Assembly (NCBI GenBank): GCA_002269645.1
Contig: NIVC01001509.1
Span: 1-64,000 of the forward strand
Length of the DNA stretch: 64,000 nt
Direction: 5' to 3'
Source: Macrostomum lignano
Taxonomy: Eukaryota
The notes under the pieces were generated by a model that saw nothing but the letters and a program-made list of their open reading frames with translations, had not been told where the DNA came from and ran no database searches. Below are positions 1 to 22,576 of the stretch, one piece after another. Numbering within the stretch: the stretch's first letter is position 1; every line of letters begins with the position of its first letter. The translations under genes were made by a program, and so were the position numbers.

Positions 1-104
1 TTTTATAATTTTATTCATGTTTTCGTGAATTAGTAAACTTGCAATAATATTTCAAGGCTCTAAAAATAACAGATACCTATTGCATTATGTACATGCTAGA
101 AGAT

Positions 105-290
105 ATAATGCCATCTTCATATCGATTTCAAGAGTGCCTTCGACTCGATTTGTCAAGGTATACTCCCTATCGTACAGCTCTGGGCATAACGTGGCTTCTG
201 CGTTCTGCCATAATGGCGATCGATGTACCACAAACGGGTCGGTATTAGTGCAGACCCCTTTTCCTACCAAACGACAACAGCTTCTGCTGC
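105..290 (+). mobile_element. Degraded non-LTR (RTE/LINE-like) reverse transcriptase fragment
   Basis: Across a frameshift the sequence reads NAIFI/DFKSAFDSI, resembling the RT motif (F/I)DFxKAFDS(I/V), followed by an AIMA-like segment. Broken by stops and frameshifts. Confidence 0.45.
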
Positions 291-1588
291 GACGATGCAT
301 GTGGTACTGTATCACGCGCGCTGCTTGATTGTCTAAGCCACCTTGTCTAAGCCAGCTGGTAGTCAAATGTTTTAGAATAATGTGTTGCGGGGTGGGCCCC
401 TCTTCTTTGACGATGTCTATAATCTCGATGTTTCTGTTGAATTAAATAAGTCGGAGGTTCGATTTGTTTCTCTCGATCTCTAACCTTCAACAAGATGTTT
501 ATTACTAATCAATGTAGCAGCAATTCCTAATAGGATATTGATCACGCAATTACGCAAATTTGTTAAGCAATTCAGTGAAATGGAGCCACAGGCTACTTAT
601 CGATATTGTTGCACGAATTTACGTTTGTCCGGATTTATCTCTGTTAGATCAGGATATTAGAGTTCAGGCCCGATTGTTGGGGCAAGCTTGTGAGCAGTTT
701 AGGAAGCAAAGAGGCGGAAACCGAGTGCGGCGAGAGGGCGAGGCGCGAGGCGCGAGGCGCAAAGGGACGAGAGCGGACAAGGGCGGACGAAGGCGGAGAT
801 TGGCTTCATTCTCACTGAACGCTAGTATATATATGATTTCTATAACGCATTTCATTGGTGTTCGCTTCACTCAATCAGATCTTTACTGCCGCACAAGCAT
901 GTGCTGTGCTTCCTGATAGGAAAACCTTCTGAAGGTTGCATTAGACTAAAAAATAACATTGGGCATAACATGCTTAAATTAAGATCACTTCAGTAGGCCA
1001 CATCATCCGCGCCCACAATGCCCACAAACGGATGCTGCTGACGTTGCAGGCACCTTACCGGCGAAGATAAGCACGCACTCGGCATTTCCTGACTGTCTGC
1101 AAACCTGCTGAGCTTTGGGGTGCGCTCTGCTTGACGGTGCTCTGGTTTTAAGACGTACTGACAGCGAATTTTGTTGTTGTTCTTGTCATTGAATGCTACG
1201 AGCTCGTAAAATGCACATTGTTGCTGTCGCGTGTTTTGCTATTGATCGAATGTACTCGTTTGTGTACTCGTAGAAAAACATCCTGGGTCGATGGCATATA
1301 CATGTACACATGATGGATCAGTATGAATACATGTACGAAGCTACATATGTTTATCGAACGTACTGCATGTACGCTCGTAAAAGACAGTAAAAAATCTCGC
1401 AGGAAAGTTAGGGATTATACTTTAATAATTATTAATTATATTTTACACATCTATTTTTTATTATAGTAGAAACTGGCAGAAAACATATGCGCACTCGTCC
1501 ATGCAATAGGAAAGCATGCATTAGTTTATTGTTGTCTTCGGCATTCTGCGTTATACAGCTGTTAAATGCCACTTAACAGTTTTGGACA

Positions 1589-3157
1589 CTACTGATTGCC
1601 CTGCGGCCTGCTCTGCTGAACCGCTTCGTCAATGCGATAGGCTTGACGACTTTTCCATAGAGCGTCTGCAGCGTGGTCCCGTTCATGTACTCCATGGTGC
1701 GCTGAGATGCACTGTTGAACCCGGTGCAGCGGGCCGCAGGTGCTGCAGTAATAACGCTTGCACTGCATCCCGCTCGACGTAGTGTAGAACAGGCTCTTTG
1801 GCGGTCCGTAGAATTCCAGCTGCGCTGTAGAGAAAGTACGTTTCTTGCGTTGGTGCTCCAGTCAGCGATTTAACCACTAGGCCGTTCCAATTGGTAGCTA
1901 TCCGGAATACTCCTGACCATTCGGAGACTACCACTGAAAGACCTTCCAGTTGGTTGCTATCCTCCTACTGACCATTCGGAGAGCTACCACTGAAAGACAG
2001 CGACAGTTGGTTGCTACTATCCTCCTCCTGACCATTCGGAGAGCTACCACTGAAAGACCTTCCAGTTGGTAGCTATCCCTCCTCCTGGTCCGAGAGCTAC
2101 CACTGAAAGATCTTCCAGTTGGTTGCTATCCCTCCTCCTGACCATTCGGAGAGCTACCACTGAAAGACCTTCCAGTTGGTAGCTATCCATTCCTCTTGAC
2201 CATTCGAGAGCTACCACTGAAAGACCTTCCAGTTGGTAGCTATCCCTCCTCCTGACCATTCGGAGAGCTACCACTGAAAGACCTTCCAGTTGGTAGCTAT
2301 CCCTCCTCCTGCGAGAGCTACCACTGAAAGATCTTCCAGTTGGTTGCTATCCCTCCTCCTGACCATTCGGAGAGCTACACTGAAAGACCTTCCAGTTGGT
2401 AGCTATCCCTCCTCCTGGTCCGAGAGCTACCACTGAAAGATCTTCCAGTTGGTTGCTATCCCTCCTCCTGACCATTCGGAGAGCTACCACTGAAAGACCT
2501 TCCAGTTGGTAGCTATCCCTCCTCCTGACCATTCGGAGAGCTACCACTGAAAGATCTTCCAGTTGGTTGCTATCCCTCCTCCTGACATTCGGAGAAGCTA
2601 CCACTGAAAGACCTTCCAGTTGGTAGCTATCCTCCTCCTGGTCGAGAGCTACCACTGAAAGACCTTCCAGTTGGTAGCTATCCATTCCTCCTGACCATTC
2701 GGAGAGCTACCACTGAAAGACTTCCAGTTGGTAGCTATCCCTCCTCCTGACCATCTCGAGAGCTACCACTGAAAGACCTTCCAGTTGGTAGCTATCCATT
2801 CCTCTTGACCATTCGGAGAGCTACCACTGAAAGACCTTCCAGTTGGTAGCTATCCCTCCTCCTGACCATTCGGAGAGCTACCACTGAAAGACTTCCAGTT
2901 GGTAGCTATCCATTCCTCTTGACCATTCGGAGAGCTACCACTGAAAGACCTTCCAGTTGGTAGCTATCCCTTCCTCTTGACCATTCCTCTTGAGAGCGAA
3001 AACTCCAGAAAACTCCAAAAACCAAAGACCGATAGATGTACTAGCTATCGTACGTCTTTTATCTTATGAGTTAAAATCTCAATCAAATCGAAAGCTACTC
3101 ACGGTCCTCAACGAATCCAGTGTACGGCTCCGTATCTCTACCAGTCTTCTTGGCCAT
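1589..3157 (-). CDS. Small two-exon gene, 96-aa Cys/His-containing protein of unknown function
   Basis: Exon 1 3157-3103 (ATG, MAKKTGRDTEPYTGFVED, donor GTGAGT). Exon 2 1824-1589 (acceptor tttctctacAG, PQLEFYGPPKSLFYTTSSGMQCKRYYCSTCGPLHRVQQCISAHHGVHERDH...QGNQ*). Phases join (55+236=291 nt). AATAAA follows the stop on the minus strand. An additional upstream exon cannot be excluded. Confidence 0.7.
1905..2990. repeat. Intronic minisatellite, ~57-bp unit
   Basis: Unit approx. gagctaccactgaaagaccttccagttggtagctatccctcctcctgaccattcgga, about 18-19 copies, inside the intron of the 96-aa gene. Confidence 0.95.
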
Positions 3158-3278
3158 TATGCACGTAAAATTAACACAAGCTATCAATAAAATTCAATTA
3201 TTAATTTGACTGTATAAATTCTCCCGCTGTAAAATATATAGGAATACGCTCAGTTTAAAACGGCGCCAACTGGCTTGA

Positions 3279-3291
3279 GTTGCTAAGCAAC
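3279..3291. promoter_or_regulatory. RFX X-box-like palindrome
   Basis: GTTGCTAAGCAAC matches the GTTGCY-N-RGCAAC RFX dyad and lies ~120 bp upstream of the ATG at 3157 (-). Confidence 0.5.
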
Positions 3292-6200
3292 TTAGCCGCC
3301 AACCATGCCCCCCGGGGTAAGAAGTTTTGGTGAGAAGCTGTCGATAAAAATACACGTGGGCGTGTACTCTGGCCAGCAGCTACAATGTACATCTGGTCAG
3401 CTATTCTCAGTGGGCCACCTGCCATTGTGCTCCTTTTCTCTCAAACTGGAACAGTTGAACCCTAAGGCATTTCTAGTCAATGTATATGCACTCCACTATA
3501 AGTAATGATGATTGTGCTACTATGAGTAGCAGTCAAGAATATGAGCCCTGGATGACACACGTAGTAGCTCGTAAATACAAGAAATTTAACCCCCTTGAGA
3601 AGTTGAGAAATGTATTTAGATAAGTTGAAAAGACTAATTATGATTCATCGGCTAAAGCTACATGTAAGTCTGTCGAGCCTAGTTCTAGAAGCTACACAAG
3701 CGGATCACACCGAAGACAGTCAAAACTTGATACTAGTGAGATCGCCGAAAGACTCATAGAGTTCGACGGCGACGCCGCGCGGTGCTCAACAATCATTAGA
3801 GATTACTCGTAATTCAGGTCTAAACTGGTTGAGCCAAGCGTCCGCCAGACTCGCCTAGCTAATCAGCTTGTTGGCTTTTTTGTCCAAAAGAAGTCAACAA
3901 CCCAACCCCTAGGATCTTGCGGGACACCTGCTTCTGCTCGGCAGTGCCTGATCCCTCCTAGAAGAAGCGGAATGCTTGGTTGGAGGACAGCGGTGAAGCC
4001 CCCATGGCTAGAGGCAGAGTCAGAGGGATAGCAGCTCAGACAAGCCACATCCGGAACGAACTGCTTTTGTAGTCCCTAACAGAGGCTACTTGGAAGTACC
4101 ACCGTAACTGTTAAACATACTGTGAGTTGCGCCACTTTGCATGCCACCAGCCCGCATATTTGTGTAGACGCAGAAATTCAAAGCTACGGATGGGACTATG
4201 GATAGACAGTGTAGAGAATTCAAGTATATATTGGTCTACCGTTTTGCTCGATTGCATTGCTCAGTGACTCTTGGTTCAACTCTGGTCTATATTACAGTGT
4301 CCTTAGTGCTAAAAAGGGCTGAGATTCTTTGAGAATAAGCTTAGGAAGGTAGGCGGCACAGCGGCAGGATGCAAGTCCAATCGCTGCTGTTATTGTTGGT
4401 GCTCTGCGTCGGAGCAGCCACTTTTGCTGCCGGTGCCAGCGTGAAAGCACCCGAATTGAGTAAGTACAACCTAAATATGATTATATTTGGTGATTAGTCC
4501 AAAAATATCCAATCTTAATAACCAAGTTACTGTATGTACATGTGACCAATAACTGAAGCCAACGGATGCAAATCGATCGAGTAAATCGGGACCGGGTTTT
4601 CTTTGCATTGCTTCGCTGCATAATCTGCATACACCATCGCAAACACAATTATACCAAATGCTCATGTGACCTATTCAGTAGTCTGTTTAAGTAGTATCAT
4701 TCTTGTTAAAAATCATTCGCTTCCATGCAAGATGGATTGAAGAACCAACTTGTCAATTAAAGAGTTTGTTCAGGGTTCAGTTCATCGGTAGTTGTCAATT
4801 CAAATGCTTTTTTTATACGAACTATAGTGTGCTCGAACCATCGGCTTGATTTGCAGAATCTTCACAGTCGCAGGCGTGCATCATCAACAAACGAAAAATC
4901 ATGGAGGCTGCCCGCAGGTACTACAAAGCGCAATACGACACGAAACTGCTCCTCTTGAAGCTGCAGCTTCGTCGCCAGCAGCTGGCGGAGAAGAGAACCC
5001 CGCACCAGCGCAGAATTCGACGCCGAATTTCGAGATTTAAGCGCCGTGTGCAAAAGGTGAGGAAGTTGTTTAAAAGGAAGCTCAGGAAAGTTACGAAGAG
5101 GTATCAGCGAAAGGTTATGCGAAAGCTGAAGGTGAAGCCTCTGTCGAATCGAAGGATTCGCTTAGTGCAGAAGGCCTTCTTCAGAAAAGGTATCATCTCA
5201 AAGAAGGCGGAGAGAATCGCTAGAAAACCAATCAGGCTAAGGCCGTTCATTCAAGGAAAGACCATCTGCAAGTCCCAAAGACTAAGACGAGACCTGAGAC
5301 GGCTGAGGTCTCCTTGAGTCGACCGAATAACCAGACGAATTTTGAGGAAATATCAAAGGAAAGTGAGAAGAGAGATGGACAGAAGATTGAGACAGCAGAA
5401 GAGAAAGACCCGGCGTTACGTAGTTACTCAGGTTGACCGTCAACTCCGTAGACTGATAATTCACAAGTGCTGCAGGGGTCGTGGAAGACGTCATGTACTA
5501 CGGCGCAAAATCAAAGCGCTTGTGAGACACTTCCAAAGTCGGGTAGGCAATGTTCGGCGCGGAAGAAGCCGTAAAATTGTCCGCAGCTTGATTCGGCGTT
5601 ATCGAAAACCTCTACGAAGAAGGCTGAGAAGGATTCTACGCCAAGTAAAGCACCGGAGTGGCAGTAGGAGAGGTAGACAGTACAACAGACAGATTAGACG
5701 AATTGTTAGGCGAATTTTGAAAAGCCGACGACCGGTTCTCAGACTTCTAAGAAGGCGTACTAGATACCAATCCAGAAGGCGCATTAGGCCCGTAACAACC
5801 AGCAAGCGTTGGCGACTGCACCGTCGAAGAGTGCTGAGACAGCGAAGGCAACTCATCAAGAAGAAAAACCGGATCTGTGGGTATACAAAATCTGGTCGAC
5901 CGTCGAAACGGGGCAAAAAATCAGGCAATTTTCTAAGTTGAGGGTGGAAAAGCAGACAAGACGCAAGCTAATAAGACGATTTGAAAAAATTAGTAGACGT
6001 CGTCGTCCAGAAGTAAAAAGGCGTCTCAGTCGAAGGCGACGAACAAAAGTAAATCGACGCCGAGCACAACGGAAGAGCGGAGAGTCAGCCGTACAAGAGT
6101 GATTAAAAAAGTTCAGCGCCTGGTTGTCAAAGCCAAGAGAGCACTACTCATCAGTTTGAAGCAGAGGCGCACTGTTCGACGCATTCGAAGGCGTAGACGT

Positions 6201-9200
6201 TCTCTGAGACGCCGTTTGAGGAGGATCATCTCGAAGAGGCGCCGGTTGAAACGACGAATTACCCTGGTCAGGGCCAGGCGCTCGAGATTGATTCAACGGA
6301 TGCAGAAGCTCAAACGCAAAAAAGCTATCATCAACAACATGAGGAAGGGATCAGTTATCGAGAACGTCACGCGTAAGACTGTTCGAATTGATAGGCGCTT
6401 GCGCCAGCTGGCAAAACGCATTACGAAGTGCACAAAAAATATCTTCCATTTGAAGCAAAGAAAAGTCAGAATAAAGCAGAGAATTATTAAAATCTCTATC
6501 CGTCGTCAAACGCTAAGGAAACGCGGTGCTCGATTTTGCGAAGAAAGGCTCGACGTCAGCTTAAAACGTTCAGAAAGCTGAACAGAAAAAAGCGGAGATT
6601 TACTAGAGGCGTGATTAAACGAAAACTTGTCAGTCGCAGAACCTTTTTCCGGGTTGAAAGACAATCCAGCCGAGTGCTGAGGCGTAAAACCAAGCTAGTT
6701 CAATCCAAGCGCAGAAGAAGAACGGCTTCAAAAGGACGGCGCCGCTCTCGCCGAGTTGTTGTCACTCGAAGGCTGACTGGTATGCACAGGAGGTGAACAG
6801 TATCTAGAGTGGTTAAGACATTCCACTGACTGGCCAAGAGAGTCACCAGCGCTGCCCGGAGAAAGCTAGTCAACCGAAGTAGAATCCTTCGAATTCAGAA
6901 ACGCCGAATTGTGTTGTTGAAGCGACGTGTCAAAAAAATTACGCATCGCGCTCGCGTTCTGAAACGGCGAGTAACGGTGATAAAAATCCGTCGCAGAAAG
7001 CTGTTGAAGCAGCTGAAACGAGTCCAGACAAAAGGAGGACCAAAAAATGCTTTCAGACAAATTGTGAGGAAAATATCCGTTTGCGGTCGGCGCATTCGAC
7101 GGCTGCGCGTGCGAAGAATTCGGCTGAGAAGACGCATCAATAGAGCCATTCGCAGGCGCAGAGTCTTGAGGGCCAGAGCGCGTACAATCCAGCGCAGAAT
7201 TGTTAGACAAGATCGAACTGTGAGCCGTTTGTATAAGAGGATTTTAGTCAGGAATATCCAATGGAAGCTTATTGGTAAAGAGACAATGCGACGCATTGAG
7301 AAAAACAATTTGAAGGTTACATCAAGGGCAGGTAGGAGAATTTACCGGCGAAAGAAGGTCATAAAGAAGCCATTTGTTCTGATCGGCAAAAGCAGAAAGC
7401 TGATACAGGTAGCCAAGCGTGCAGCAAAGGAGTTGAAGAATGTTAACAAAAGAGTAGAGCGCATAATTCGAAGAATTCTCGTCACTAAGCGACGAGTTGG
7501 TCGCCTTAAGAGACAGACGCGATATCTGAGGCGCAGTATTCAACGCATCACTCAAAGAAGAGCAACTGTTAAAAAGTACATGGCAAAAGTCAGCACTAAG
7601 CGAGCACTTCTTATTAAGCGCCTAACTCTGCTCAAATTAGGAACTATTCAGAAGAAGAAATCTGGAATGTCGGTGCGCATTCTAACCCCCAATAAAAGAA
7701 AGATAAATCTGGTGTCCCGACAAATCGCCAGGTATACAAGACGGCTTCAGAGAGTGTCTAGAAGAAACATACAGTTGAAGGCAAGGATTCGCCGCATTAC
7801 AAGCAGGCGACAGCGACTTAAGAAACGGGTGCTAATGCAACGGGTGCTAATGCTCAAGAAGAAGACTCAGAGAAGAAAAGTCCGTTTTAACACGCTGCTG
7901 AAACGATTTCAGAGGCGAATCGTAAAGTACAATGCCACTAATGCAAGGGTCTTGCGCTACGCAGTGCGACAGGCGAAGATCCGACTGACCAAGCGCGTTT
8001 TGTACCTGAGCAGAACGAAACAGCTTGGTAAGCATCTCAAACAAGGAAGGAAAGCGACGAAAAAAGCAAAAAATGGATTGCTACTAACAAAAAAATCGCC
8101 AAAAAACGTGCTGTGCGACAAATCAAGAAAATACGGCTCGTATATAAGAGAATCGCACGCGCTAAAGACAGAGTGCTGGCTAGCAGACACCGAGTTCTTG
8201 TCATTAGACGACGCAGCGTTCAACTGAAGCGAAGAATCCGCAGAATCAAGGCCAGGAGACGTCGATTGAGACGGTGCATTAGGAGAGCCGATAAAAAAAG
8301 AAGAAAGCTCATCGAGCGACTCAAACAATTGAAGAGGAAAAAGTTAATAGTGCGAAGACTCTTGTCCTCGAAAACAAAGAGTAAAATTGTGATAATATAC
8401 AGGATCAGCCGAATCAATACTGGTATCAAGCGACTGACTTACAAACTATCGACCTGTACTTCACGAATTGTGAAGTATAAAAGAAGGCGCGTCCAGCTAA
8501 AGACCCGAATTCGTAGAATCTCCAATCGGAAGCAACGTCTTCGCCGTCGAATAAGTTCAGTGCGCAGAAAGACGCGTCGGCAGGAGCGCAAGGTCCGACG
8601 GCTTGTTCTTAAGAAGCGACGCTTCACGAAACGAGTGTTGCGCAGGAAGCTGATTAGTCAATCAACGATTACTCGAACATCAACGAAAAGCCGCCGCATT
8701 GTGAAGCGCATAGTCGAGTTCAAAGACTATTTGCACTAAGGCATGGCGGTAGCAGTCTCCGCCGAAACCGAAGGCGAAGCGGTCGAGCTGCCCCTGTGTT
8801 GCGCTCAAAGCGGATTATCATTTCTGGAACTAAGGTTGTTCTTCCACGTCTTGTGTCGCTGTCAGGAGAAGACCTCGAAAGACAGTTGTAAAACGCAAAG
8901 TAGTTCTGATTAAGAAGCTTCGCAGAAGGCTTCTCAAGCAAAAAGCTAAGCTTGCTCGACAACTGAATGCTCGAGCTCTGATAAGTAAAGTTGTTCGACG
9001 GCGAGTGAAGGTTCGTGTGTCGTTCAGCAAGGTTCTAGGCCGAAGGAAGTTACTCAAGTTGACAAAAAGTGAGGTAGTTGCCAAGAAGCTACTGAAGTCC
9101 AAGCGGCCAGTTCCTGTTCGAAATCTAAAGAAACTCGAAGCCAGACTCAAGTCAAAGCTGCGTGTGCTGAGCCAAAGGGTTGCATCGGTGACTCCGGCTT

Positions 9201-9602
9201 TCAGGAAGCTGGTCAAGATGAAAAAATCTGCCTACTCTGAGGATGAAAACACTATGAAGACGGAAATTACAAGCAGCATTGTCAAGTCGAAGGAGGCCTG
9301 TACACAGCTGCTCAACCAGCAGAAGTGGCTGTACAAAACTGAGTACCAGACGCTAGTTACAGAGGATTAGAGGAGGGTAAGCGGGGCATTTCCACTACAA
9401 TTGTTTAAGATATTATACTGACTAATTATTGATAAAAAGAATGTATCGTTCAATTCATATGTACTTCAGAATTTGACACAGAAACTAACAAATGGGTTGT
9501 GAGATCAACTGAAACAGGTAAGTTTTTAGCTGAGGCGAATCAGAGCGCTGAATATTTATGTTGACTTGCTACTGCACTACTGACTTGTATCGGAATTTTC
9601 AG

Positions 9603-9893
9603 ACTGGGCCCACTTCAGCCTTGGCTGCTTTAAGGACAGTGCGTCGAAGCGCGATCTCAAGCACCTAGTTGAGACCAGCTCAGGTATGAGCCTGGCTCGT
9701 TGTCTCAAGTTGTGCAAAGACAGCGGCTATCCATTCTTCGGCGTGCAAAATGGAGTAGAATGCCGCTGCGGCAGCTCCTACGGCAACCAGGGCGTCGGCA
9801 CTTCGTCCAGCTGCAACAAGCCTTGTCGCGGTGACCCCGCGCACACCTGCGGAGGTCTCTGGCATAACAACATCTACTCGACTGGCCTGACTG
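9603..9893 (+). CDS. WSC domain exon 1 of the secreted K/R-rich gene
   Basis: LGCFKD...RDL...MSLARCLKLCKDSGYPFFGVQNGVECRCGSSY...CNKPCRGDPAHTCGG...NIY has the WSC 8-Cys pattern. 291 nt, phase 1 on both sides. Confidence 0.9.
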
Positions 9894-10433
9894 GTATTAA
9901 ATACTTTCTTCTTAGTATTAACATATCATTCGAGGGTTGGCTACATAAATTACATGGTCAGTGGGTCTTAGAGCAAAAAAATACGCGCCCCTGGGCTGTA
10001 ACGTAAAGATAGCGCGAAACCTGTCAACGAAACGTCTGACCTCGCCGGCAGGGTGCTTTCCACATCAATCAACAGTACGAATCGCTGTGGATGAAGTGGC
10101 CTGACAGCTGGAGTCGCCGACGGCGCAAAAGGTCGCTTGAAAGTGACTTGCTCGTCGCTGATCTTGAAGGGTGAAGGTTGCACGTGGCTACTCGTGACTG
10201 TGTCCATAGGGACTCATAGTAGAGACCGTGAACTTTGTTATTTCACAAATACCTGAGATGCTTCATTCTTTTGTTTGACAGAAATAGTACTAGACAACCA
10301 AAAGAGTACCTATTTACAACCTATCTGTACCTAATTTCAATGATGATGGGCACTTGCTGATCCTCAGTTCCCGTGCAATTCCCCTATGGTTCAGTGTATC
10401 TTCAGAGTCTTTACCGACAACCCAATCGAACAG

Positions 10434-10721
10434 GATACAAACTGCTCAGCATTGGTTGCTTCCATGACAAGCCGATGCGCGACTTGCCAGAATTGGCGCT
10501 CACGAGCAGCAGCCTGACACTATCCAAGTGTTCTCAAGCCTGCAGCAAGCTCGGCTTCAAGTACTTCGGCGTACAGAACGCCAGAGAGTGCTGTTGCGGC
10601 AACTCCTACGGCAAGTACGGCTCGGCAGGGTCGGACAAGTGCCGCTCGGCTTGCAGCGGCAGCAAGGAGGAGACCTGCGGTGGACTTTGGCTCAACAGTA
10701 TCTTTAAGACTGGACTGGCCA
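10434..10721 (+). CDS. WSC domain exon 2 of the secreted K/R-rich gene
   Basis: IGCFHDKPMRDL...LTLSKCSQACSKLGFKYFGVQNARECCCGNSYGKYG...CRSACSGSKEETCGG...SIF. 288 nt, donor GTGAGT. The 5' boundary is somewhat uncertain. Confidence 0.88.
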
Positions 10722-10842
10722 GTGAGTTCTGGCACTGTTCTGATATTTTGAGATCAAGCATAGCTCAACCACTTCTCAAAAAATACTGATTGCATCAGTA
10801 CTGCCGCGCTATCTACACATTTTTTTAGATTGCATTGAATCA

Positions 10843-11141
10843 GGGGGGTTGTAGACTAGTGGTTAGAGGGTCGGATTCACGACTGAAAGGTCGGGGGTTC
10901 GAATCTCGACCCACTCGGAACAATTTGTGTCCTTGGGCTAGACACTTAACTCCGTATTGCTTCAGTTCACCCAGCTGTAAAATGGGTGCCAGCATTAGCT
11001 GGGGTAATTGAGGGTGTGTGTGGCGACCTCCAGTCCTTGGACTGAACAGCCGTACGCAGCCTTCAGACGTACCGCGCAATAGCTGCGGCTGTGCTGTCGG
11101 TTGCACACCTGGCCATTAGGGCAGGTGTAATCAATTATTAT
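10843..11141 (+). mobile_element. tRNA-derived SINE with CORE-like central domain
   Basis: tRNA-like head (A box tagtggttag, B box ggttcgaatc), then tgtgtccttgggctagacacttaac...cagttcacccagctgtaaaatggg resembling the MIR/CORE consensus, and an (att)n-like tail. A second copy lies at ~15695-15912. Confidence 0.75.
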
Positions 11142-11449
11142 TTTTGAATTTCAAAACTTCTGCGGAGGGATAATAAGGACTAATAATTAATAAGGATCTT
11201 AAGGACAGTAAATTCGTATTTATTTGATTTTTTCACTGGCCCATCTAATTATTTATATTTTCTCAGGCAGGGGAAGCGTTACTCTCGAAGTGGCGCAAAA
11301 CATCAGGACGAACGGCGGTAAGAACGCGCTTCTTGTAATTTCGCGTTCGCTTTATTTCTGTTTTTTACGCTCGTACATGCTTATCTAAAAATTTTGTTAA
11401 AAATTCCGCTCAATGATCCTCTCCAAGCAGCATGCTGCAGTCTTTTCGG

Positions 11450-11705
11450 TGAGTCTCTCTCCTTCGCAGAGAATCTCTCTCCTTCTCAAAGAAACTCCCT
11501 CCTTCGCAAAGAATCTCTTTCCTTCGCAGAGAATCTCTTTCTTTCTCAGAGAATCTCTCTCCTTCTCAAAGAAACTCTCTCCTTCGCAGAGAATCTCTTT
11601 CTTTCTCAGAGAAACTCCTTCCTTCGCAGAGAATCTCTCTCCTTCTCAGAGAAACTTTCTCCTCAGAGAAACTCTTTTCCAAAGAGAGAATCGACAATTT
11701 CTCTC
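11450..11705. repeat. TC-rich minisatellite (~20-bp related subunits)
   Basis: Repeated tctctctccttcgcagagaa / ttctcaaagaaac units in an intron. Confidence 0.85.
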
Positions 11706-13839
11706 AAGAAATAAACACGGAGACAGAAAGCACACATTTCCTTTGCAGGTGCAGAAAGTTGGTCAGAATCAACATCTTCTGTGACTATCGGTATATCGAA
11801 AAGTGGGTGTGTCGAAAATTTCATAATCGCTCTTAATCGCAGCATGCGCAGATTACGCCATATTTTGTTCTCCTCCTTGTAGGTCACCCAGAAGTGTCGA
11901 CAACTACAACGGAGTTGCCCGGTGTGCAAATTGGAAGCTCTAATTCTCAATGTTCAGGGCTCCAAACTAGATATTTTTTAGAAATAGCCTAATTCATAAA
12001 ACTAAAAAATTATGATTTTTTTCTCAAATTTTAGAAGATACTACTCACCAAGTTATTCACGAGAATAGTAAGAAGTACATATAAAGTATAGAGAAGAGAG
12101 TATAATTGTTGTCCTTTGTTTTAAACAGCGCGCAGTATTGTATTCGCACGAATTTTAGACGGGCAAAGCTTGTCTGGCGCGGCCGACGTCGGTTCAATGA
12201 AAGGAATTCCTGGAAAGACTGGTGAGGAGTGGCAGCGGCAGCAAGCATTTAAAATAGAAAAGAGCACCTTTTCTAGTACATGGTGTTGTTCATTCTTTCA
12301 GACGTAGTGAAGACGGTCAATCCAGACGGGTCCGTGACCTGGACTGAGTCTTCAGACTCGCAGGTGTTTGGCGGTAAGCTGTTAAAATGCATTTTATTCA
12401 ACTTCGTAACTTTGTAAACAATCGATCTATTTCAGCGAAGGAGGGGTGCAACTTTAACAGTGTTTTCGACTGTCATTTTTAGGAGCTCCGTAACCCAGCT
12501 ACCTGAGGCTGCTCGGGTAAGAATCCAAGGTACCAGATAGCTCTCGTTCTTGGACCGGCCCTTTAATGAAGCGCCCTCACTTCCTTAATATGAGCTCGCA
12601 TAGTCTGCCTTTACCGCAGCCACTGTTCACCTACAAGTGATACATCAACTTGATTATAACAAAACTACACACTACACATGGATTTTCAGATCGGCCGAAT
12701 TGGAATACTCGAATTCTTGATAATCAGACTAAACTGATTTGGTGTTGGAATATTTAAACTATTATTTTATTGCGTACATATACTTCTTAGCTTTTCTCAG
12801 AAACTTGCGAATAAAATTTCGACTTCCATTTTAATTTTGATAACAATAAAGTGCGAATAAAAAGATAAAAATCTGTTTTTTTGGTTTTAATTCCTTCCAG
12901 GCATCGTAACTTGTCGGTAGTTTTTTCGACTTATTTCTTTTTTGTGGAACTGCTGCTGTCATACATGCACATACATGTAAGATTAATATGCAATTTTTAC
13001 CACTATACAGCTACAGTCATTGGGACTACGACAAAGAGCAAACAGTTAAAGAGCAAAATTTCTCTTTTGCAAATTAATATTGGTACGCAATAATATACAT
13101 GTAATAATGCACGACGACTAATAATCTATATGCGCTTTTTATTACTTCTATTTAGCAACGACAAAATACAGTGTCAGTCAGTCAACAGACAACGTCACAG
13201 GGTGCGTTTCAAGGCCTCGGCGCGAACGTAGGCCGTATCGCCGGCAGTGTCCGGGGCGCCGCGGCATGTGCAGTGGCCCCCCTAGCTAATTGAAAACCCT
13301 GGGTACGCCATTGGTACATGCATGTATGTAGTAACGGGAAACGATTTCTGTAAGCAATTATAAACGCCTTTTACATCCCAAAACTTTTAAAGACTTAAAA
13401 AAACGACCGTATATAGCGTATTTACGGTTAGCTACAGCGATTTTATACGGGAATTTTCGGTAATAATTTACATGTATTCCCCAGGACACAGTCCATTTTA
13501 TTCGCTTCCTCTTTCTAATTCAATTCTCTTCCATTAGATTTTGACTCATACTCTCTTTTTGCAATAACAAATATAAAGTAAATATCTAGTATAGATCGAC
13601 TGGTGCGTGTCTCTGAGTGCGCTATTTGTGATATCGCAGCATACTGCTGTACATGTATCCGACGATTTCATCGACTTTTTCACCAGATTTACACTCTTCC
13701 TTGCTTTGCCCCCAATCTCATGCGATGTCGAAAAATTTAGCTACCAGCGAACCTACGCTTAAAGAAAGCGGATGTTCTGTACGGCGTAACGGCGAATTTT
13801 TATCGCGTGAAATATGTGCAGTTGTGCATGGCAATCTGT

Positions 13840-14323: not shown

Positions 14324-17300
14324 ATGGACGTCAGTTTGGATGATCTTATCAAGCAGAAAAAAGTGTCAATGTAAGCATTCTAATTATTAACTTTCCTTAT
14401 TATGCCTAGTATTATTTCCCTGTCGGGACTCTAGTCTAAGGTTAGGCCTACATTATATAATTTATATAATACATGCTATTAATTATTATACAATATGGTA
14501 ATAATTTGAATATATTATATGATATATAATTATATTATATTGATATATATAGGCCTATGGCTATATGACATGTAAAAATTGTAATATATTACTTATTAGT
14601 AGGCCTATTAGTATTATAGTTTGTTTTGGGTTGGCACCTAGTAAAATATGGAATCTGCAGCAGAATTGGAATGGAATAGCTCAGTAAAATGTGGAATCTG
14701 CAGCGAAATGGTAAAATGTGGAATGAGCAATGGAATCCAGTAACTTTAACTAAAATGCAAATGCAAAGTAGCTAGGCCTAAAGTGCATTATGATCTATTA
14801 TAGAATCTTATGCCAATAAAGCTTTCAAAATTTTACCAAACTATTATGATAATAATTTTCAACACCTATCAGCTATATTATTCACAAGAGAACCTATATT
14901 ACTACTTTGAGTAAGGTCCAATAGATTCTACTATTTCTAGTTCAGTTTGCCTCAATATAGAATCATATTAAAATTTCTTTATATATCCTTTTTATACAGT
15001 TACATTGCTATAGTGTAGGCAAAGCTATATATATTTAAAAATTAATTTTTTGATTCTTATATTTCACATTTTACTTTAAGTTAGTAGATTCTACAGTTGA
15101 TTCCGCATTTTACCATTCCACTACAGATTCCACATTTTACCATTCCACTGCGGATTCCATGTTTTATTGGATACCATTTAGGTCTAGGATATAAATAGGG
15201 CCTAACTTTGGTTGGCACTAGTGCAGGTTTGTTTATAACAATAAACATAACTATAAACCAGATAAAGAGTTTGTAGTTTAATATATGTATAGTTTTATAG
15301 ATTTGGTTAAAAAATTGGTAAAGAAATTTAAGACAGTAATTATTAGACACTACCCCTTGGGCCATAGATAACTCACAAGATAGACTTCTTTGCACATTAG
15401 CATTATTACTCAAATCATCAATTCAAATCCTTATAAAGCAAATAAGATAAATCAAATGAGATAGAAAAAAATAACTTTTTTCTTATTATTTAATATTTGT
15501 TTTTGTTTCATTCTGTTTAGTAAATTTGTATACTTTTTGTTTTAATTAATTTTAATTAAACTTCCTTTGATTGAAATTCAGCTTTACCTATATGCTAAAC
15601 CTAAATTTGGCCATTTTATATGCCAACCATATGCTGCAATTTTGGCCAAGAATTTTTATAAGAGATAGAATTATAAATAATAATTGTTACCCATTGAACT
15701 CAATTGAAAAGTCAGGGGTTCGGTTCTTGACCTACTTGGAACAAACTGTGTCCTTGACACTTAACTCTGCATTGCTTCAGTTCACCCAGCTGTAAAATGG
15801 GTGCCTGCATTAGCTGGGATAATTGAGGGTGTGTGGCAACCCCCCAGTTCTTGGACTTAGCAGTTGGTGGCACATCTGCCCATTAGAGAGGCATGGTGTA
15901 TTCAATTATTATTAAATGATTACAAAAATCGTCATAACCACCCAGGCCAAAGCGCAAGCCGGGTCAGCAGCAGCAAAAGAGGCAGCAGCAGCAGAAATCA
16001 GGCCCAATAATGAGACGGCAGCAGATTAGCGACGCCCGGGACCGGATTAGCAAGCTGCGCAAACAGCAGCTGCTTACTCAGGACGCCCGCGGTCGGATTC
16101 AACAGCGCAAGTTGTCGAATATCAAGGATGCCAGACAGTTGCTAATCGGCAAAGCTAAGCAGCAGAGGCAGCAGCCGCAGTTGCAGACTGTGAAGCGGCA
16201 GGCAGCCTCGGCTGGGCCACTCGTAGTACCAAAGAAGGTCGTTGCCAACGATCTCTACCGGCAGAGGCCGGCCCCGCCGCCGCAGCTGGAGTACGAGGAC
16301 GACAACAGCTATCGGCTGATGCCTGCTGGCGGCCAAGCGCCAAGGCCGCGCGGCGGCGGCGTCGGCGCTCGCGAGATCCCAGTCCACGTAACTCGGCAGC
16401 GACGCGACCGAAGCCGATCGCCAGTGCAGCGCCGCGCGCCTCCGCCTGCGCCGCCGATGCCGCTGCCTCCGGCAGCTTCGTCAGCCACTATCTTGCAGGC
16501 CTACAAAGTGTCTATTATGAATTTGCACCAGGGCGTTACTCGCGAGGATATCTACGAATTGTTCTCTAGTGTTGGACAGGTCAGCTTTTAATTACGAAAT
16601 TTTTGTCTCTAAATATCTCCCAATTTATCCCGAAAATCACCATGAGCCTGGCAATCATTCCGGACCTCATTTAGAATCCCTCGTGAGCAGAGCTTATATC
16701 TACCAAAACCACTGTGAGAATCTCTCATGACAGCCTTATAACCTTAATCCATCCCTAGAATCTCCCAAATCCATCCCTAGAATCTCCCCAATCCACACCT
16801 AGAATCTCCCCAATCCACCCTAGAATCTCCTGAATCCACACCCAGAATCTCCGAATCCATACCTAGAATCTCCCCAATCCACCCTAGAATCTCCCCAATC
16901 CACCCTAGAATCTCCTGAATCCACACCCAGAATCTCCGAATCCATACCTAGAATCTCCCCAATCCACCCTAGAATCTCCCCAATCCACCCTAGAATCTCC
17001 TGAATCCACACCCAGAATCTCCGAATCCATACCTAGAATCTCCCCAATCCACCCTAGAATCTCCCCAATCCACACCTAGAATCTCCCGAATCCACCCATA
17101 GAATCTCCCCAATCCACCAAATAGTCTCCCCAATCCACACCTATAATCTCCCCGATCCACCCTAGAATCTCCCCGATCCACCCTAGAATCTCCCCAATCC
17201 ACCATAGAATCTCCCCGATCCACCCTAGAATCTCCCCGATCCACCCTAGAATCTCCCCAATCCACCATAGAATCTCCCCGATCCACCCTAGAATCTCCCC

Positions 17301-18636
17301 AATCCACCCTAGAATCTCCCCAATCCACCATAGAATCTCCCCGATCCACCCCTAGAGTCTCCCCGATCCACCCTAGAATCTCCCTAATCCACCCCTAGAA
17401 TCTCCCCGATCCACCCCTAGAATCTCCCCGATCCACCCTAGAATCTCCCCGATCCACCCCTAGAATCTCCCCAATCCACCCCTATAATCTCCCCGATCCA
17501 CCCTAGAATCTCCCCGATCCACCCTTAGAATCTCCCCAATCCACCCTAGAGTCTCCCCGATCCATCCCTAGAATCTCCCCAATCCACCCTAGAATCTCCC
17601 CAATCCACCATAGAATCTCCCCAATCCACCCTAGAATCTCCCCGATCCACCCTTATAATCTCCCCGATCCACCCCTAGAGTCTCCCCGATCCACCCTAGA
17701 ATCTCCCTAATCCACCCCTAGAATCTCCCCGATCCACCCCTAGAATCTCCCCGATCCACCCTAGAATCTCCCCGATCCACCCTTAGAATCTCCCCAATCC
17801 ACCCTAGAGTCTCCCCGATCCATCCCTAGAATCTCCCCAATCCACCATAGAATCTCCCCAATCCACCATAGAATCTCCCCAATCCACCCTAGAATCTCCC
17901 CGATCCACCCTTATAATCTCCCCGATCCACCCTTATAATCTCCCCGATCCACCCTTATAATCTCCCCGATCCACCCTTATAATCTCCCCGATCCACCCTT
18001 ATAATCTCCCCGATCCACCCCTAGAATCTCCCCAATCCACCCTAGAATCTCCCCGATCCACCCTTATAATCTCCCCGATCCACCCTTATAATCTCCCCGA
18101 TCCACCCCTAGAATCTCCCCAATCCACCCCTAGAATCTCCCCAATCCACCCTAGAATCTCCCCAATCCACCCTTATAATCTCCCCGATCCACCCCTAGAA
18201 TCTCCCCAATCCATCCCTAGAATCTCCCCAATCCACCCTAGAGTCTCCAAGTGCGGTGCAGAAGCAAATGAACACTGTCAAAAGAACCGTGACCTAATAA
18301 ATCCTCTCCAACAATCGCCAGGTGAAAAAGTGCGTCCTACTGCACCCTGGCGCAGCCGAAGTGGTGTACCCGTCCAAAGAGGACGCCCTGTCCGCTATTC
18401 GTCGTTACGATCGTCGCGAACTGGACGGCATGCCGATGCAGCTTCGTCTGTCGGTGGTTGGCATCAAAATGCACGCCCCCAGCGCCGGTTCCAGGCCTGC
18501 TGTAAGCGGCGGCGGTGGCGGCGCTGCTATCGACGAGCGGGCGGTTCGTGCCGCTCTGTTTCGCTCGAGCGGCGGCGGCGGCGGCGACCATCGCGGCAGT
18601 GGCGGCAGGCCGGTGAATTTCAAGGTGTCGGTCTGA
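14324..18636 (+). CDS. POLDIP3: Polymerase delta-interacting protein 3 / SKAR (ALYREF-family RRM protein), 3 coding exons
   Basis: Exons 14324-14370 (MDVSLDDLIKQKK), 15946-16579 (three DAR motifs; RRM start NLHQGVTREDIYELFSSVG) and 18322-18636 (VKKCVLLHPGAAEVVY...LDGMPM...NFKVSV*). Phases join; matches POLDIP3 as recalled. Confidence 0.88.
15695..15912 (+). mobile_element. Second, 5'-truncated and internally deleted copy of the CORE-like SINE
   Basis: Shares ttgcttcagttcacccagctgtaaaatgggtgcc.gcattagctggg.taattgagggtgtgtg and the caattattatt tail with 10843-11141. Confidence 0.75.
16745..18250. repeat. Intronic minisatellite, ~19-21-bp unit
   Basis: (agaatctccccaatccaccct)n fills POLDIP3 intron 2. 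Confidence 0.95.
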
Positions 18637-19835: not shown

Positions 19836-22576
19836 ATGAGCAAGCGAAAATCTCATGGTCATGATATCCGCTCATTATTTGAGAACTTAAAGCGGTCCCG
19901 CCCTAACCCTGATCCTGCGCTACTGTCTACGCCTAGTTCTAGCACTACACAGCCAGATTCATCTATTGTGTCTTGTGACACTGCTACTGGCAGTTTGCCC
20001 GACTTGGCTACTCCGAATTCAGTTCCAACAGCTCCCGAGCAACAACTGCAAGCTACTATTACTTCTTCAAGTCAGTTTGACGAGTCTGATCTCCAACATC
20101 AAGCAGATGAAGCAGCTGCTGAGACTGAGATCAATGTCAATGACATCGGCTATGCTGTTGAGCTTCGTCGCGATGGAAAGCTGGATACAGCTACTCGACT
20201 GCGATTCCTTAAGGACTGTTGGGTGCCCCCACAAGGGTACTCATTCCCGTTCACGCTTAAATCTGATAAGGGCAATGTCCACAAGCGCTACTTGTCTCAC
20301 CAACATCTAACTGGTCGCAACGCATGCTTTGCGTATTCTGCTAAGCTCGGCGGCGTATTTTGCAAGTAAGTTAGAAGTTAATGTGAGTTTATTGATGTAT
20401 TGCTAAATTGTACTCTTGACATCTGGATCTGGTCTTGAGGTACATGTATGGACCACAGATACTAGAACAACTCTAGTATCTAGTATCTAGTATCTAGTGT
20501 TCTAGTATCTGTGGTATGGACTTAATGCTCACTCCTACCATTCTAACCATTTCTTTCTCCTTTAGGTATTGCGTTCTATTTCTTCCGACCAACTTTGCCA
20601 TCCATGGACAAACAGTCGATGCCTTTGTGGGAACTCCATGCACTAAGTTCGATGTCATCACAACAAAGCTGAAGAAACCTTTGCAATGTGACTACCACAG
20701 AAGTGACTCTGTGATCAAAGCCGATGCCCTGCTATCTGGAACGAATGTTGGCCACATGCTGGATGTCAGTCGCGCAAAGCTAGTGAAGGAAAATAGGGAA
20801 AGACTAAAACACGTAATTGAACCAATTGAATTTCTCGCTCGCTGTGGTCTGGCTTTTCGAGGACATCGTGACTGTGGACCTATAAAAGTTCATCCAGATG
20901 GAACTATTGACTATGATAAAGGGAACTTCGTCGCGCTTCTGCAGCTTCTCGCAAAACATGATCCTATTCTACGTGAACACATTTGCACTGGACCATCAAA
21001 TGCCAAATACACTTCCAGTGAATCACAGAATGAAATAATTCAGGCTCTGTCTGATGTTATCACCCAAGATTTAGTAAAAAAAATCAACAAAGCAGGCTAC
21101 TTTGCGCTGCTTGCAGATGAGACTACGGATTCTTCGCACAAAGAACAGATGTCCATCTGTGTTAGGTACCTCGACATCAGTGATGGAAGTGTAGCTATTC
21201 ACGAAGAGTTCATATACTTTGTTCACGTTGAAGATTTGACTGGTATCGGGCTTGCAACAAAGCTTCTCGAGATGCTCGATTCTCTCCATATTACAGCACA
21301 ACTTGTTGCTCAAGGCTATGATGGAGCTTCAGCCATGTCTGGCAAGTTCAATGGCGTTCAGGCAGTGATTCGCGAGCAGCTGGGAAGAAAACTAGCAATC
21401 TATGTGCACTGTGCTGCGCATAATCTAAACCTGTCCCTGCAGGATGCTTGTAAGCTAGATTCAGTTCGTGCCGCTATTACTGCTGTTAATACAGTCACAG
21501 TCTTCATTCGTTCATCACCGCAAAGAACAGCTCTGCTTGAAAAAAAAATCAAAGAGCTGGTTCCGGAGTCATCTGTGCATCAACTTCTACAGCACTGCAA
21601 GACCAGATGGGTTGAGAAGCAGGAGGCTTTCATCCGATTCAACCTGCTCTTCCCAGCAATCATTGAAACTCTAGAGAAGATCAGCACATGGGGAGGAGAG
21701 GCAGGCAGCAATGCTCGAAACAACCTCAAACTTTTGCTAGACAGCGAATATGTTATTGCAGGCCACATCATCGATGCCGTTCTCACCATCACCAAGCCAT
21801 TATCAGAGAAATTGCAGTGTGTAGATCTCGATCTTGTTGATTGTGTCAATGAAATTAAGGCTGTCATCGATGTTCTTCGAGATCTCCGCTCTGATGATGG
21901 CCATGTCCGTTACAATAAGATATTCGATTCTGCTGAGAAAGCACTCGGCGAGCCACTACAAAAGCCTCGAACCAGTGCCAGGTGTCGACAGAAGCATCGT
22001 GCCAACCCCGATGTCTCCACGGCACGTGATTACTTCCGCATAGCAATGTACAATCCATTCCTGGATGGGATAATTGCTACTCTTGAGGAGCGCTTCAGTT
22101 CTCATGCGCAGCTTGCATTCCAGATGGCACGACTGCTTCCTCAGAGTGTTGTTGACGAAAGTTTTGACAGCGTGAAGAAATCGATAGAAATTTACATCGG
22201 ACAGTTACGAGGATTAAGCTTTGTGGACGACATCGAGGCTGAATTCTTGCTATGGAAAAAGCGCTGGCAGAATGTCGATCAAAAGGACAGACCGCGAAGT
22301 GTGCTCGAGACGTTGGTAAATTCAGCTGTTAGCCTCCAGAGCTTTCCTAACATCCGGCTTCTACTACAAGTTCTGGCGACGATTCCCGTCACCACTGCAA
22401 CTGCTGAGCGATCATTCAGTCAGCTTCGTCCACTGAAGTCGTACCTACGTTCTACAATGGGACAGGAGCGACTGACAGGATTGGCCCAGCTTCTAATCCA
22501 CAAGGACATGAAGCTGGACATTGATAAAGTTATCGATCAGTTCGTACAGAATGGGTCTCGTAGAATTGATCTGTAA
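19836..22576 (+). CDS. hAT transposase (ZMYM1/THAP12-like: TTF Zn finger, DUF4371, hATC dimerisation domain), 2 exons, 846 aa
   Basis: Exons 19836-20365 and 20566-22576 splice to give GVFCK|YC. Motifs LADETTD, GYDGAS, HCAAHNLNL, TRW and TATAERSFSQLR. No stops or frameshifts. Confidence 0.92.
20454..20513. mobile_element. 60-bp MITE in the transposase intron
   Basis: 16-bp perfect TIR CACAGATACTAGAACA/TGTTCTAGTATCTGTG, flanked by the 8-bp direct repeat GTATGGAC (20446-20453 and 20514-20521). Confidence 0.8.

What the first reader, a model, noticed from the sequence alone, without database searches (positions are those of the whole stretch)
4369..12482. Giant secreted polycationic (Arg/Lys) protein with tandem WSC domains: candidate glue, mucus, seminal or antimicrobial secretion
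Seen: splicing exon 1 (hydrophobic signal peptide) to 4857 gives one reading path through ~1,500 codons of K/R-rich sequence (44 of 100 residues K/R in a block I counted; acidic residues are rare), then two WSC exons and small S/T-rich exons. The DNA is not a tandem repeat, so the composition was probably built and kept by selection. Established: WSC domains are extracellular glycan-binding modules, and large K/R-rich secreted proteins occur in flatworm temporary-adhesion systems (Macrostomum ap1). From memory, and to be verified, WSC proteins were also reported among Macrostomum prostate transcripts. Inference: signal peptide + polycation + 2xWSC does not match ap1 (lectin/vWD/EGF domains) or any protein I recognise, so it may be an undescribed electrostatic cross-linker for polyanionic glycans.
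Basis: partly seen in the sequence, partly recalled or inferred. Interest (0 to 1): 0.8.

Follow-up and report, generated by a model that had tools for sequence, protein, structure and literature searches.

The report
Broken polycationic exon in flatworm WSC gene
A Macrostomum lignano gene of the known prostate-type secreted WSC-lectin family carries a 4.5 kb exon that once encoded about 1,500 residues of lysine/arginine-rich helical rod. In this genome copy three stop codons and six or seven frameshifts break that exon, so the proposed giant protein cannot be made from it as assembled.

Summary
They are a signal-peptide exon (4369-4459), a 4,520-nt K/R-coding block bounded by good splice sites (4857-9376), two intact WSC exons, and small S/T-rich exons ending at TAG 12480-12482. 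The block carries a real coding signal: 40% K+R, 2.6% D+E, all six Arg codons, heptad periodicity, long predicted helices.

It is not one reading path. Three in-frame TGA codons and six or seven frame changes break it, and its length is 3n+2. The assembly (M. lignano Mlig_3_7) was polished with Illumina reads, and 4.9 kb of other coding sequence in the window has no such lesion. The breaks are therefore probably real.

All other exons are phase 1-1. Skipping the block gives an open 344-aa secreted 2xWSC protein. This matches a published family of prostate and seminal-fluid WSC transcripts of about 1 kb (for example RNA815_80.4).

The K/R block has no homologue among 1.84 billion representative proteins, and no annotated protein covers the locus.

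Verdict: a decayed orphan polycation exon inside a known-family gene. It is moderately interesting, and the giant protein is unproven.

The parts
4369..4459 (+). Exon 1: start codon and signal-peptide-like leader; ends in phase 1 before GTAAGT
   Evidence: The c-region FAAGA resembles that of the prostate transcript RNA815_80.4 (VFAAGA). No signal-peptide predictor was available.
4857..9376 (+). K/R-rich block: a former giant phase 1-1 exon (AG|...|GTAAGC), about 1,500 codons of polycationic heptad-repeat sequence, now broken
   Evidence: Composition and codon usage. Stops by frame. Junctions. Length 3n+2. Internal protein repeat crossing a frameshift. Heptad signal. Predicted helices. No homologue.
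5315..5317 (+). In-frame TGA number 1 in the K/R frame
   Evidence: TGA is an ordinary stop in this genome; the H1 gene ends in TGA.
6794..6829 (+). In-frame TGA numbers 2 and 3 (6794-6796 and 6827-6829). K/R-type sequence continues in the same frame on both sides.
6515..6540 (+). Best-located frameshift (frame 0 to frame 2)
   Evidence: The paralogous repeat at 8296-8709 reads in one frame. It aligns to 6279-6524 in frame 0 and then to 6524-6685 in frame 2.
9368..9370 (+). TAG ending the K/R frame six bases before the donor. The frame needed by the next exon is open only from 9343.
9470..9517 (+). 48-nt mini exon, phase 1-1
9603..9893 (+). WSC domain exon 1, phase 1-1, eight cysteines
   Evidence: Pfam PF01822, E 2.8e-17. 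Splice sites.
10368..10721 (+). WSC domain exon 2, phase 1-1
   Evidence: Pfam PF01822, E 5.8e-18. Splice sites.
11267..11317 (+). Small exon (51 nt, phase 1-1); predicted only
11749..11790 (+). Small S/T-rich exon (42 nt, phase 1-1); predicted only
11883..11921 (+). Small S/T-rich exon (39 nt, phase 1-1); predicted only
12302..12373 (+). Small exon (72 nt, phase 1-1); predicted only
12436..12482 (+). Last coding exon, with TAG at 12480-12482; predicted only

Best explanation
The locus is a member of the Macrostomum lignano family of small secreted two-WSC-domain proteins known from prostate gland cells. Between its signal-peptide exon and its WSC exons it carries a 4.5 kb exon. That exon once encoded about 1,500 residues of an almost purely cationic, heptad-periodic alpha-helical rod.

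In this genome copy the exon has decayed, with three nonsense codons and six or seven frameshifts. The giant 'polycation + 2xWSC' chain cannot be translated from it.

Every exon is phase 1-1, so the gene can still encode an open 344-residue secreted protein if the block is skipped (exon 1 to 9470): signal peptide, short linker, WSC, WSC, S/T-rich tail.

Shown: the anatomy, the lesions, the phases, the coding signature and the family resemblance. Inferred: that the lesions are real mutations, that the block is skipped rather than the whole locus being silent, and that the short product acts as a secreted glycan-binding seminal-fluid-type protein.
For: Exon status of the block:
- Acceptor at 4857 and donor at 9377. 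The K/R frame opens 13 nt before the acceptor, and the K/R composition fades just before the donor.

Genuine coding signature:
- K+R is 40%, against at most 21% in shuffles.
- 57% of Arg codons are CGN, so this is not simply purine-rich DNA. Codon-position bias is strong.
- Similarity peaks at lags 7 and 14 (z 5.9 and 6.6). Hydrophobic period 3.5 exceeds all 50 shuffles.
- AF2 predicts helices of 40-128 residues, mean pLDDT 72.

Decay:
- Stops and shifts are located.
- One shift is proven by an internal paralogous repeat that reads straight through it.

Lesions are unlikely to be assembly errors:
- The Canu assembly was polished with Pilon using Illumina DNA and RNA reads (PMC5730564).
- Only 2 of 7 shift windows contain a homopolymer of 5 or more bases.
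- Three lesions are substitutions.
- 4,884 nt of other coding sequence in the window (carboxylesterase exons with contiguous HMM coordinates, hAT transposase, H1) has no lesion, where 7.6 shifts would be expected at the block's rate (P about 5e-4).
- Three nonsense codons imply about 1.4% neutral divergence, and 7 indels in 4.5 kb give an indel-to-substitution ratio near 1:10. I recall that as typical of neutral decay; it was not checked here.

Short model:
- Nine exons with canonical sites give 1,035 nt, open from ATG to TAG.

Family:
- RNA815_80.4 is a 969-nt prostate-specific transcript with two WSC domains (PMC4490696).
- Many prostate-limited transcripts of about 0.7-1.4 kb have WSC-type hits (PMC5977470, Table S1).
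- The short model aligns to the RNA815_80.4 locus at 26% identity over 234 residues, E 1.5e-13.
- In both genes the signal-peptide exon ends in phase 1.
Against: - No transcript data could be consulted, so neither skipping nor any expression is shown.
- No annotated M. lignano protein covers either the WSC exons or the block. This would also fit a silent locus.
- All frame changes go in the same (-1) direction. Random mutation would seldom do that, and it hints at systematic one-base deletion errors.
- M. lignano is a neopolyploid, and polishing can fail where near-identical copies exist.
- Zero lesions in the 1,035 nt of other exons is only weak evidence that they are still constrained (2.2 expected, P about 0.11).
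Confidence: 0.62

Rival explanations
1. The giant protein is real. The lesions are consensus errors, or are private to this copy. The worm makes a secreted protein of about 1,850 residues: a polycationic coiled-coil rod, two WSC domains and an S/T-rich tail.
For: - The splice sites and phases fit such a protein.
- All frame changes are in the -1 direction, and two lie at runs of 6-7 A bases, as in long-read deletion errors. Adding seven bases gives 4,527 nt, which is 3 x 1,509.
- The coding signature is strong.
- Mlig-ap1 shows that this species does secrete giant K/R-rich proteins (PMC6410801).
Against: - Three substitution-type TGA stops, with TGA used as a normal stop in this genome.
- Most shifts are not in homopolymers.
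- The assembly was polished.
- Other genes in the window are intact.
- No protein resembling the block exists in the annotated proteome or among 1.84 billion representatives.
Confidence: 0.15
2. The whole locus is a dead duplicate of a WSC gene in a neopolyploid genome, and nothing functional is made. The intact look of the WSC exons is chance.
For: - No annotated CDS or protein covers any exon.
- P(0 lesions) in the short exons is still about 0.11 under neutrality.
- The decay appears recent, at about 1.4% divergence.
Against: - Nine exons keep canonical sites and an open frame.
- Both WSC domains score well above threshold across the full model and keep their cysteines.
Confidence: 0.17
3. 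The block is included in the mRNA and translation stops at the first TGA (5315). The product is a secreted polycationic peptide of about 160 residues.
For: Exon 1 joined at 4857 reads openly through 152 K/R-rich codons up to TGA 5315.
Against: - The stop would lie far upstream of many exon junctions, making the mRNA a classic target of nonsense-mediated decay.
- K/R coding continues for 4 kb beyond the stop, so the stop is secondary.
Confidence: 0.03
4. The block never belonged to the WSC gene. It is an unrelated gene remnant or mobile-element cargo lying in intron 1.
For: - The family member RNA815_80.4 has no such block in its 0.9 kb first intron.
- The block has no homologues.
Against: - It has the same strand, a phase-matched acceptor and a strong donor exactly at the ends of the coding signal.
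- There is no poly(A) tail and no repeat flanks, and no other copy exists in the window.
Confidence: 0.03

Closest known systems
M. lignano prostate-specific secreted WSC proteins (RNA815_80.4; WSC-type Mlig-pro transcripts such as Mlig-pro46)
   Same: - Signal peptide followed by two WSC domains.
- The short model has a CDS of about 1 kb.
- The signal exon ends in phase 1, and the WSC exons are phase 1-1.
- 26% identity over 234 residues to the RNA815_80.4 locus.
   Different: - It carries an extra 4.5 kb K/R exon (decayed), a 48-nt mini exon and an S/T-rich tail encoded by five small exons.
- Expression site is unknown.
- It is not in the annotated proteome.
Mlig-ap1, the cohesive protein of the M. 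lignano adhesive organ (PMC6410801)
   Same: - Same species.
- Secreted, with very long K/R-rich regions and extreme positive charge, combined with carbohydrate-binding modules.
   Different: - ap1 has tandem KR repeats plus C-type lectin, vWD/C8/TIL and EGF domains. Here there is no DNA tandem repeat, there is heptad-helical I/L/V-K/R sequence, and the only domains are WSC.
- No sequence match was found, but the ap1 sequence itself could not be obtained.
- ap1 is intact and expressed. This block is broken.
WSC-domain proteins in general (yeast Wsc1-4 sensors, fungal exoglucanases, WSCD1/2, KREMEN, polycystin-1)
   Same: Cysteine-rich WSC module of about 80-90 residues in an extracellular context (family knowledge from Pfam PF01822).
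   Different: No transmembrane segment, kinase-pathway tail or enzyme domain is present. No known WSC protein that I am aware of has a polycationic coiled-coil arm.
Decayed exon or pseudogene after gene duplication
   Same: Nonsense codons and frameshifts are confined to a sequence with a clear former coding signature. The lesion numbers fit a short period of neutral drift.
   Different: Only one exon is hit. The rest of the gene is open and remains in frame without it.

Membership tests
WSC domain (PF01822) proteins | Match to the family profile above the curated threshold | tested here: met
   63.2 and 65.3 bits against a cut-off of 27.8. Profile positions 12-82 and 2-82 of 82 are covered.
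WSC domain (PF01822) proteins | Conserved set of about eight cysteines per domain | tested here: met
   Read from the translations: eight Cys in 9603-9893 and at least nine in 10368-10721.
M. lignano prostate secreted WSC family (RNA815_80.4-like) | Signal peptide plus two WSC domains in a transcript of about 1 kb | tested here: met
   The short model is 1,035 nt and 344 aa. Family transcripts are 0.7-1.4 kb. The signal peptide was judged by eye only.
M. lignano prostate secreted WSC family (RNA815_80.4-like) | Sequence similarity and shared exon phases with a verified member | tested here: met
   tblastn against L003 gives E 1.5e-13 at 26% identity. The signal exon ends in phase 1 in both genes.
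M. lignano prostate secreted WSC family (RNA815_80.4-like) | Expression limited to prostate gland cells | not testable with these tools
   No transcript or in situ data for this locus. No annotated protein.
Mlig-ap1-type K/R-rich adhesive proteins | Long, extremely basic K/R region | tested here: met
   K+R 40%, D+E 2.6%, net charge about +555 over 1,482 codons.
Mlig-ap1-type K/R-rich adhesive proteins | Tandem KR repeat units | tested here: not met
   No DNA repeats. Only weak protein-level repeats, at an offset of about 670 residues, plus heptads.
Mlig-ap1-type K/R-rich adhesive proteins | C-type lectin, vWD/C8/TIL and EGF domains | tested here: not met
   Pfam finds only WSC in the locus.
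Mlig-ap1-type K/R-rich adhesive proteins | Sequence homology to ap1 KR regions | tested here: inconclusive
   Zero hits in both protein searches. However, compositional correction weakens such searches, and the ap1 sequence was not held in the supplements.
Functional protein-coding exon | An uninterrupted reading frame between its splice sites, with length compatible with the phases | tested here: not met
   Three TGA codons, six or seven shifts, a TAG six bases before the donor, and length 3n+2.

The most novel reading that the evidence does not exclude
Either an intact copy of this gene exists in M. lignano (another homeologue or allele), or the lesions are assembly artefacts. The worm would then secrete a protein of about 1,850 residues. 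Its 1,500-residue heptad-periodic helical arm, with net charge near +550, would be fused to two WSC lectin domains and a mucin-like tail. This would be an undescribed kind of electrostatic rod-plus-lectin cross-linker for polyanionic glycans, or for an acidic coiled-coil partner, in seminal or adhesive secretions.
Probability: 0.15. Interest if true: 0.65.

Novelty: new variant of a known kind. Interest (0 to 1): 0.35.

Why it matters
If the reading is right, a rapidly evolving seminal-fluid-type lectin family acquired a giant orphan polycationic module and then lost it. The same species built a similar kind of module into its adhesive protein Mlig-ap1. That would be a concrete example of the birth and death of extreme-composition secretory modules through phase 1-1 exon shuffling.

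It also has a practical use. It warns annotators that this 4.5 kb 'ORF-rich' stretch is not a translatable gene as assembled, and it supplies an unannotated WSC gene model.

If an intact copy exists, it would be a new design of charged secretory protein and worth in situ and RNAi tests.

Tried and rejected
1. Short introns at the frame changes. Rejected: K/R-type sequence runs on without a gap from one frame into the next, leaving no room for introns of the 85-474 nt seen in this gene. A 39-nt GT..AG stretch around TGA 5315 has a weak donor and is implausibly short.
2. TGA recoded as a sense codon. Rejected: the H1 gene in the window ends in TGA.
3. Homopolymer assembly errors as the general cause. 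Only the shifts near 5915 and 8060-8110 lie at runs of 6-7 A bases. The others do not, and control genes are intact.
4. K/R richness as a by-product of purine-rich DNA. Rejected on codon usage and shuffles.
5. Retrocopy or transposon cargo. There is no poly(A) tail, no flanking repeats and no second copy.
6. Homologue searches with the 438-aa ORF gave nothing, both with the word index and with full phmmer. The WSC model found only three distant metagenome proteins.
7. The Mlig-ap1 sequence could not be retrieved from the paper's supplements.
8. Pfam on the K/R ORFs gave only sub-threshold coiled-coil noise.
9. Rfam found nothing in the locus.
Full report
**Source.** The complete H1 ORF of the window (53253-53948) is encoded at the same coordinates of NIVC01001509.1 in GCA_002269645.1. 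PMC10733133 names that accession as the Macrostomum lignano Mlig_3_7 assembly. The window is therefore the first 64 kb of that contig. The assembly was built from PacBio reads with Canu, then polished with Pilon using Illumina shotgun and RNA-seq reads (PMC5730564).

**Anatomy.**
- ATG 4369 opens MQVQSLLLLLVLCVGAATFAAGASVKAPEL. The exon ends at 4459 before GTAAGT with one base of the next codon, which is phase 1.
- An acceptor (ttgatttgcag) ends at 4856. From 4857 the phase-matched frame reads KSSQSQACIINKRKIMEAARRYY... and becomes K/R-rich.
- The K/R signal runs to about 9230 and fades into a neutral or acidic tail. A strong donor (AGG|GTAAGC) follows at 9377.
- Downstream lie a 48-nt mini exon (9470-9517), WSC exon 1 (9603-9893), WSC exon 2 (10368-10721) and four small exons (11267-11317, 11749-11790, 11883-11921, 12302-12373). 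The last exon is 12436-12482 and ends in TAG.
- Every internal exon has AG/GT borders and a length divisible by three, and all are phase 1-1.
- Both WSC exons match PF01822 at E about 1e-17 across almost the whole profile.

**Is the K/R block more than chance?** Yes.
- Along the open frames, 1,482 codons give R 26%, K 14%, L/V/I 26% and D+E 2.6%, with net charge about +555.
- Shuffled versions of the block reach at most 21% K+R in a frame and a longest ORF of 271 codons. The observed values are 31% in a single fixed frame, 40% along the path, and 465 codons.
- Arg uses all six codons (AGA 99, CGA 82, CGC 64, AGG 63, CGT 38, CGG 31). Codon position 1 is 44% A and 10% T. This is selection for amino acids, not a purine-rich DNA tract.
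- Residue similarity peaks at lags 7 and 14 (z 5.9 and 6.6). Hydrophobic residues recur every 3.5 residues, above all 50 shuffles.
- AlphaFold2 on the 438-aa ORF alone predicts helices of 40-128 residues with mean pLDDT 72.
- The encoded sequence is therefore a heptad-periodic, almost purely cationic helical rod.
- There is no DNA-level repetition. At protein level, 6279-6685 resembles 8296-8709 (34-48% identity, E 1e-7 to 1e-10), and the lag-668 signal agrees with this.

**Is it one reading path?** No.
- The K/R frame has in-frame TGA at 5315, 6794 and 6827, with K/R-type sequence continuing in the same frame on both sides.
- It moves from frame 2 to 1 near 5915, from 1 to 0 at about 6080-6100, from 0 to 2 near 6524, and from 2 to 1 at 8060-8110. 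It moves from 1 through 0 to 2 between 8737 and 8850. An alternative reading of that last stretch is one further stop plus one shift.
- It ends at TAG 9368-9370, six bases before the donor. The frame that the next exon needs is open only from 9343.
- The block is 4,520 nt, which is 3n+2.
- The shift at 6524 is proven. The paralogous repeat at 8296-8709 reads in one frame and aligns first to frame 0 and then, without a gap, to frame 2.
- The frame changes are not introns, because K/R sequence passes directly from one frame to the next.

**Are the lesions real mutations or errors?**

For errors:
- All shifts go in the -1 direction.
- Two lie at runs of 6-7 A bases.

For real mutations:
- Three lesions are substitutions, and TGA is a normal stop here (H1 ends in TGA).
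- Five of the seven shift windows contain no homopolymer of five or more bases.
- The assembly was polished with short reads.
- 4,884 nt of other coding sequence in the window has no lesion, where 7.6 shifts would be expected at the block's rate (P about 5e-4). That sequence comprises five carboxylesterase exons covering profile positions 24-515 contiguously, a 686-aa hAT transposase and H1.
- Three nonsense codons among 655 possible stop-creating changes imply about 1.4% neutral divergence. Seven indels in 4.5 kb then give an indel-to-substitution ratio near 1:10. From memory, not checked here, that is in the usual range for neutral decay.

I conclude that the block is probably decayed in this copy, with about 0.8 confidence on this point alone.

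**What can the locus still encode?**
- Exon 1 and all later exons share phase 1, so joining 4459 to 9470 gives an open 1,035-nt CDS.
- The 344-aa product has a signal peptide, a 16-residue linker, two WSC domains and an 82-residue tail with 28% S+T. The mature pI is about 8.
- Under the decay rate of the block, 2.2 lesions would be expected in these exons and none is seen. At P about 0.11 this is only a weak hint of continuing constraint.

**Comparison with what is known.**
- Arbore et al. 2015 described RNA815_80.4, a 969-nt tail-specific transcript expressed in prostate gland cells. It has two WSC domains, and its knock-down abolishes staining by a prostate antibody (PMC4490696).
- Weber et al. 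2018 list many prostate-limited transcripts of 0.7-1.4 kb whose best hits are WSC-domain proteins (PMC5977470, Table S1).
- Patlar et al. note WSCD2 homology for Mlig-pro46 and several other seminal-fluid candidates (PMC6953679).
- I mapped RNA815_80.4 to NIVC01000084.1 (locus L003). Its signal-peptide exon ends in phase 1 (GCCGGTG|gtaaga). An intron of about 0.9 kb with no K/R signal follows, then a WSC exon, a 100-nt intron and a second WSC exon with the stop. Fifteen bases of the transcript between the first two blocks could not be placed.
- The window's short model aligns to that locus at 26% identity over 234 residues, E 1.5e-13.
- The WSC part of the finding is thus a new, unannotated member of a described family.
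- The same species has a documented giant secreted K/R-rich protein, Mlig-ap1. Its KR regions total more than 3,600 aa with pI above 14, and it also has C-type lectin, vWD and EGF domains (PMC6410801). The present block shares the kind of composition but not the domains or the tandem repeats.
- No sequence relationship could be shown. The 438-aa ORF finds nothing through the word-indexed search or in a full phmmer scan of 1.84 billion representatives. The ap1 sequence itself was not available.

**Mechanism.**

Best-supported reading: an ancestral gene of the prostate WSC family gained a symmetric phase 1-1 giant exon encoding a polycationic coiled-coil-like arm. In this copy the exon has drifted for roughly 1-2% divergence and is no longer translatable. 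If the locus is still used, the block must be skipped, giving an ordinary secreted two-WSC glycan-binding protein.

For the intact ancestral or paralogous form, one would expect a rod with hydrophobic a/d positions and K/R elsewhere to need a polyanionic partner, such as sulfated glycans or an acidic coiled coil, with the WSC pair giving glycan specificity. This is inference only.

**Limits.**
- No transcript data, no read-level check and no other M. lignano contigs could be searched.
- The small downstream exons and the signal peptide are predictions from sequence alone.

Noticed in passing
window 10835-11106; also 15705-15857; L003 6831-6927: A tRNA-derived SINE-like element (contains GGTTCGAATC) lies in the intron after WSC exon 2. 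A copy at 84% identity lies elsewhere in the window, and a copy at 89% lies on another contig. Neither ARAGORN nor Rfam calls it.
   Followed up: partly
window 11454-11674: A 20-nt tandem repeat of about 10.5 copies lies in an intron between the small exons. It produces spurious 'SLSFAENL'-type ORFs in three frames.
   Followed up: no
L003 8841-10615 (NIVC01000084.1): The NCBI protein for the prostate gene RNA815_80.4 (BOX15_Mlig005381g2, 171 aa) starts at an internal Met and lacks the signal-peptide exon that the published transcript contains. Fifteen transcript bases between exon 1 and the WSC exon are not found in this contig; this could be a micro-exon or an allelic difference.
   Followed up: partly
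window 20516-22576 (+): An intact 686-aa ORF carries DUF4371 and the hAT C-terminal dimerisation domain. It may be a recently active hAT-type transposase. It is not on record as an annotated protein.
   Followed up: partly
window 53253-53948 (+): A single-exon linker histone H1 gene lies inside a gene on the opposite strand annotated with a 4,560-residue product. That gene is VPS13-like, judging by a weak VPS13_C hit at 39521-40075.
   Followed up: no
window 41050-45768 (+): A five-exon carboxylesterase or neuroligin-like gene has introns filled with minisatellites, for example 41502-42210, 42627-42961 and 44652-45074.
   Followed up: no
window 16746-18248, 23759-24654, 30338-33896, 50726-51961, 54737-56250 and many others: Minisatellites and microsatellites are very dense. 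Examples are a 30-mer in 119 copies and (AGAT)n in about 375 copies. They create long spurious ORFs on both strands.
   Followed up: no
window 25776-25851 (-) and 46590-46663 (-): tRNA-Asn(GTT) and tRNA-Met(CAT) genes.
   Followed up: no
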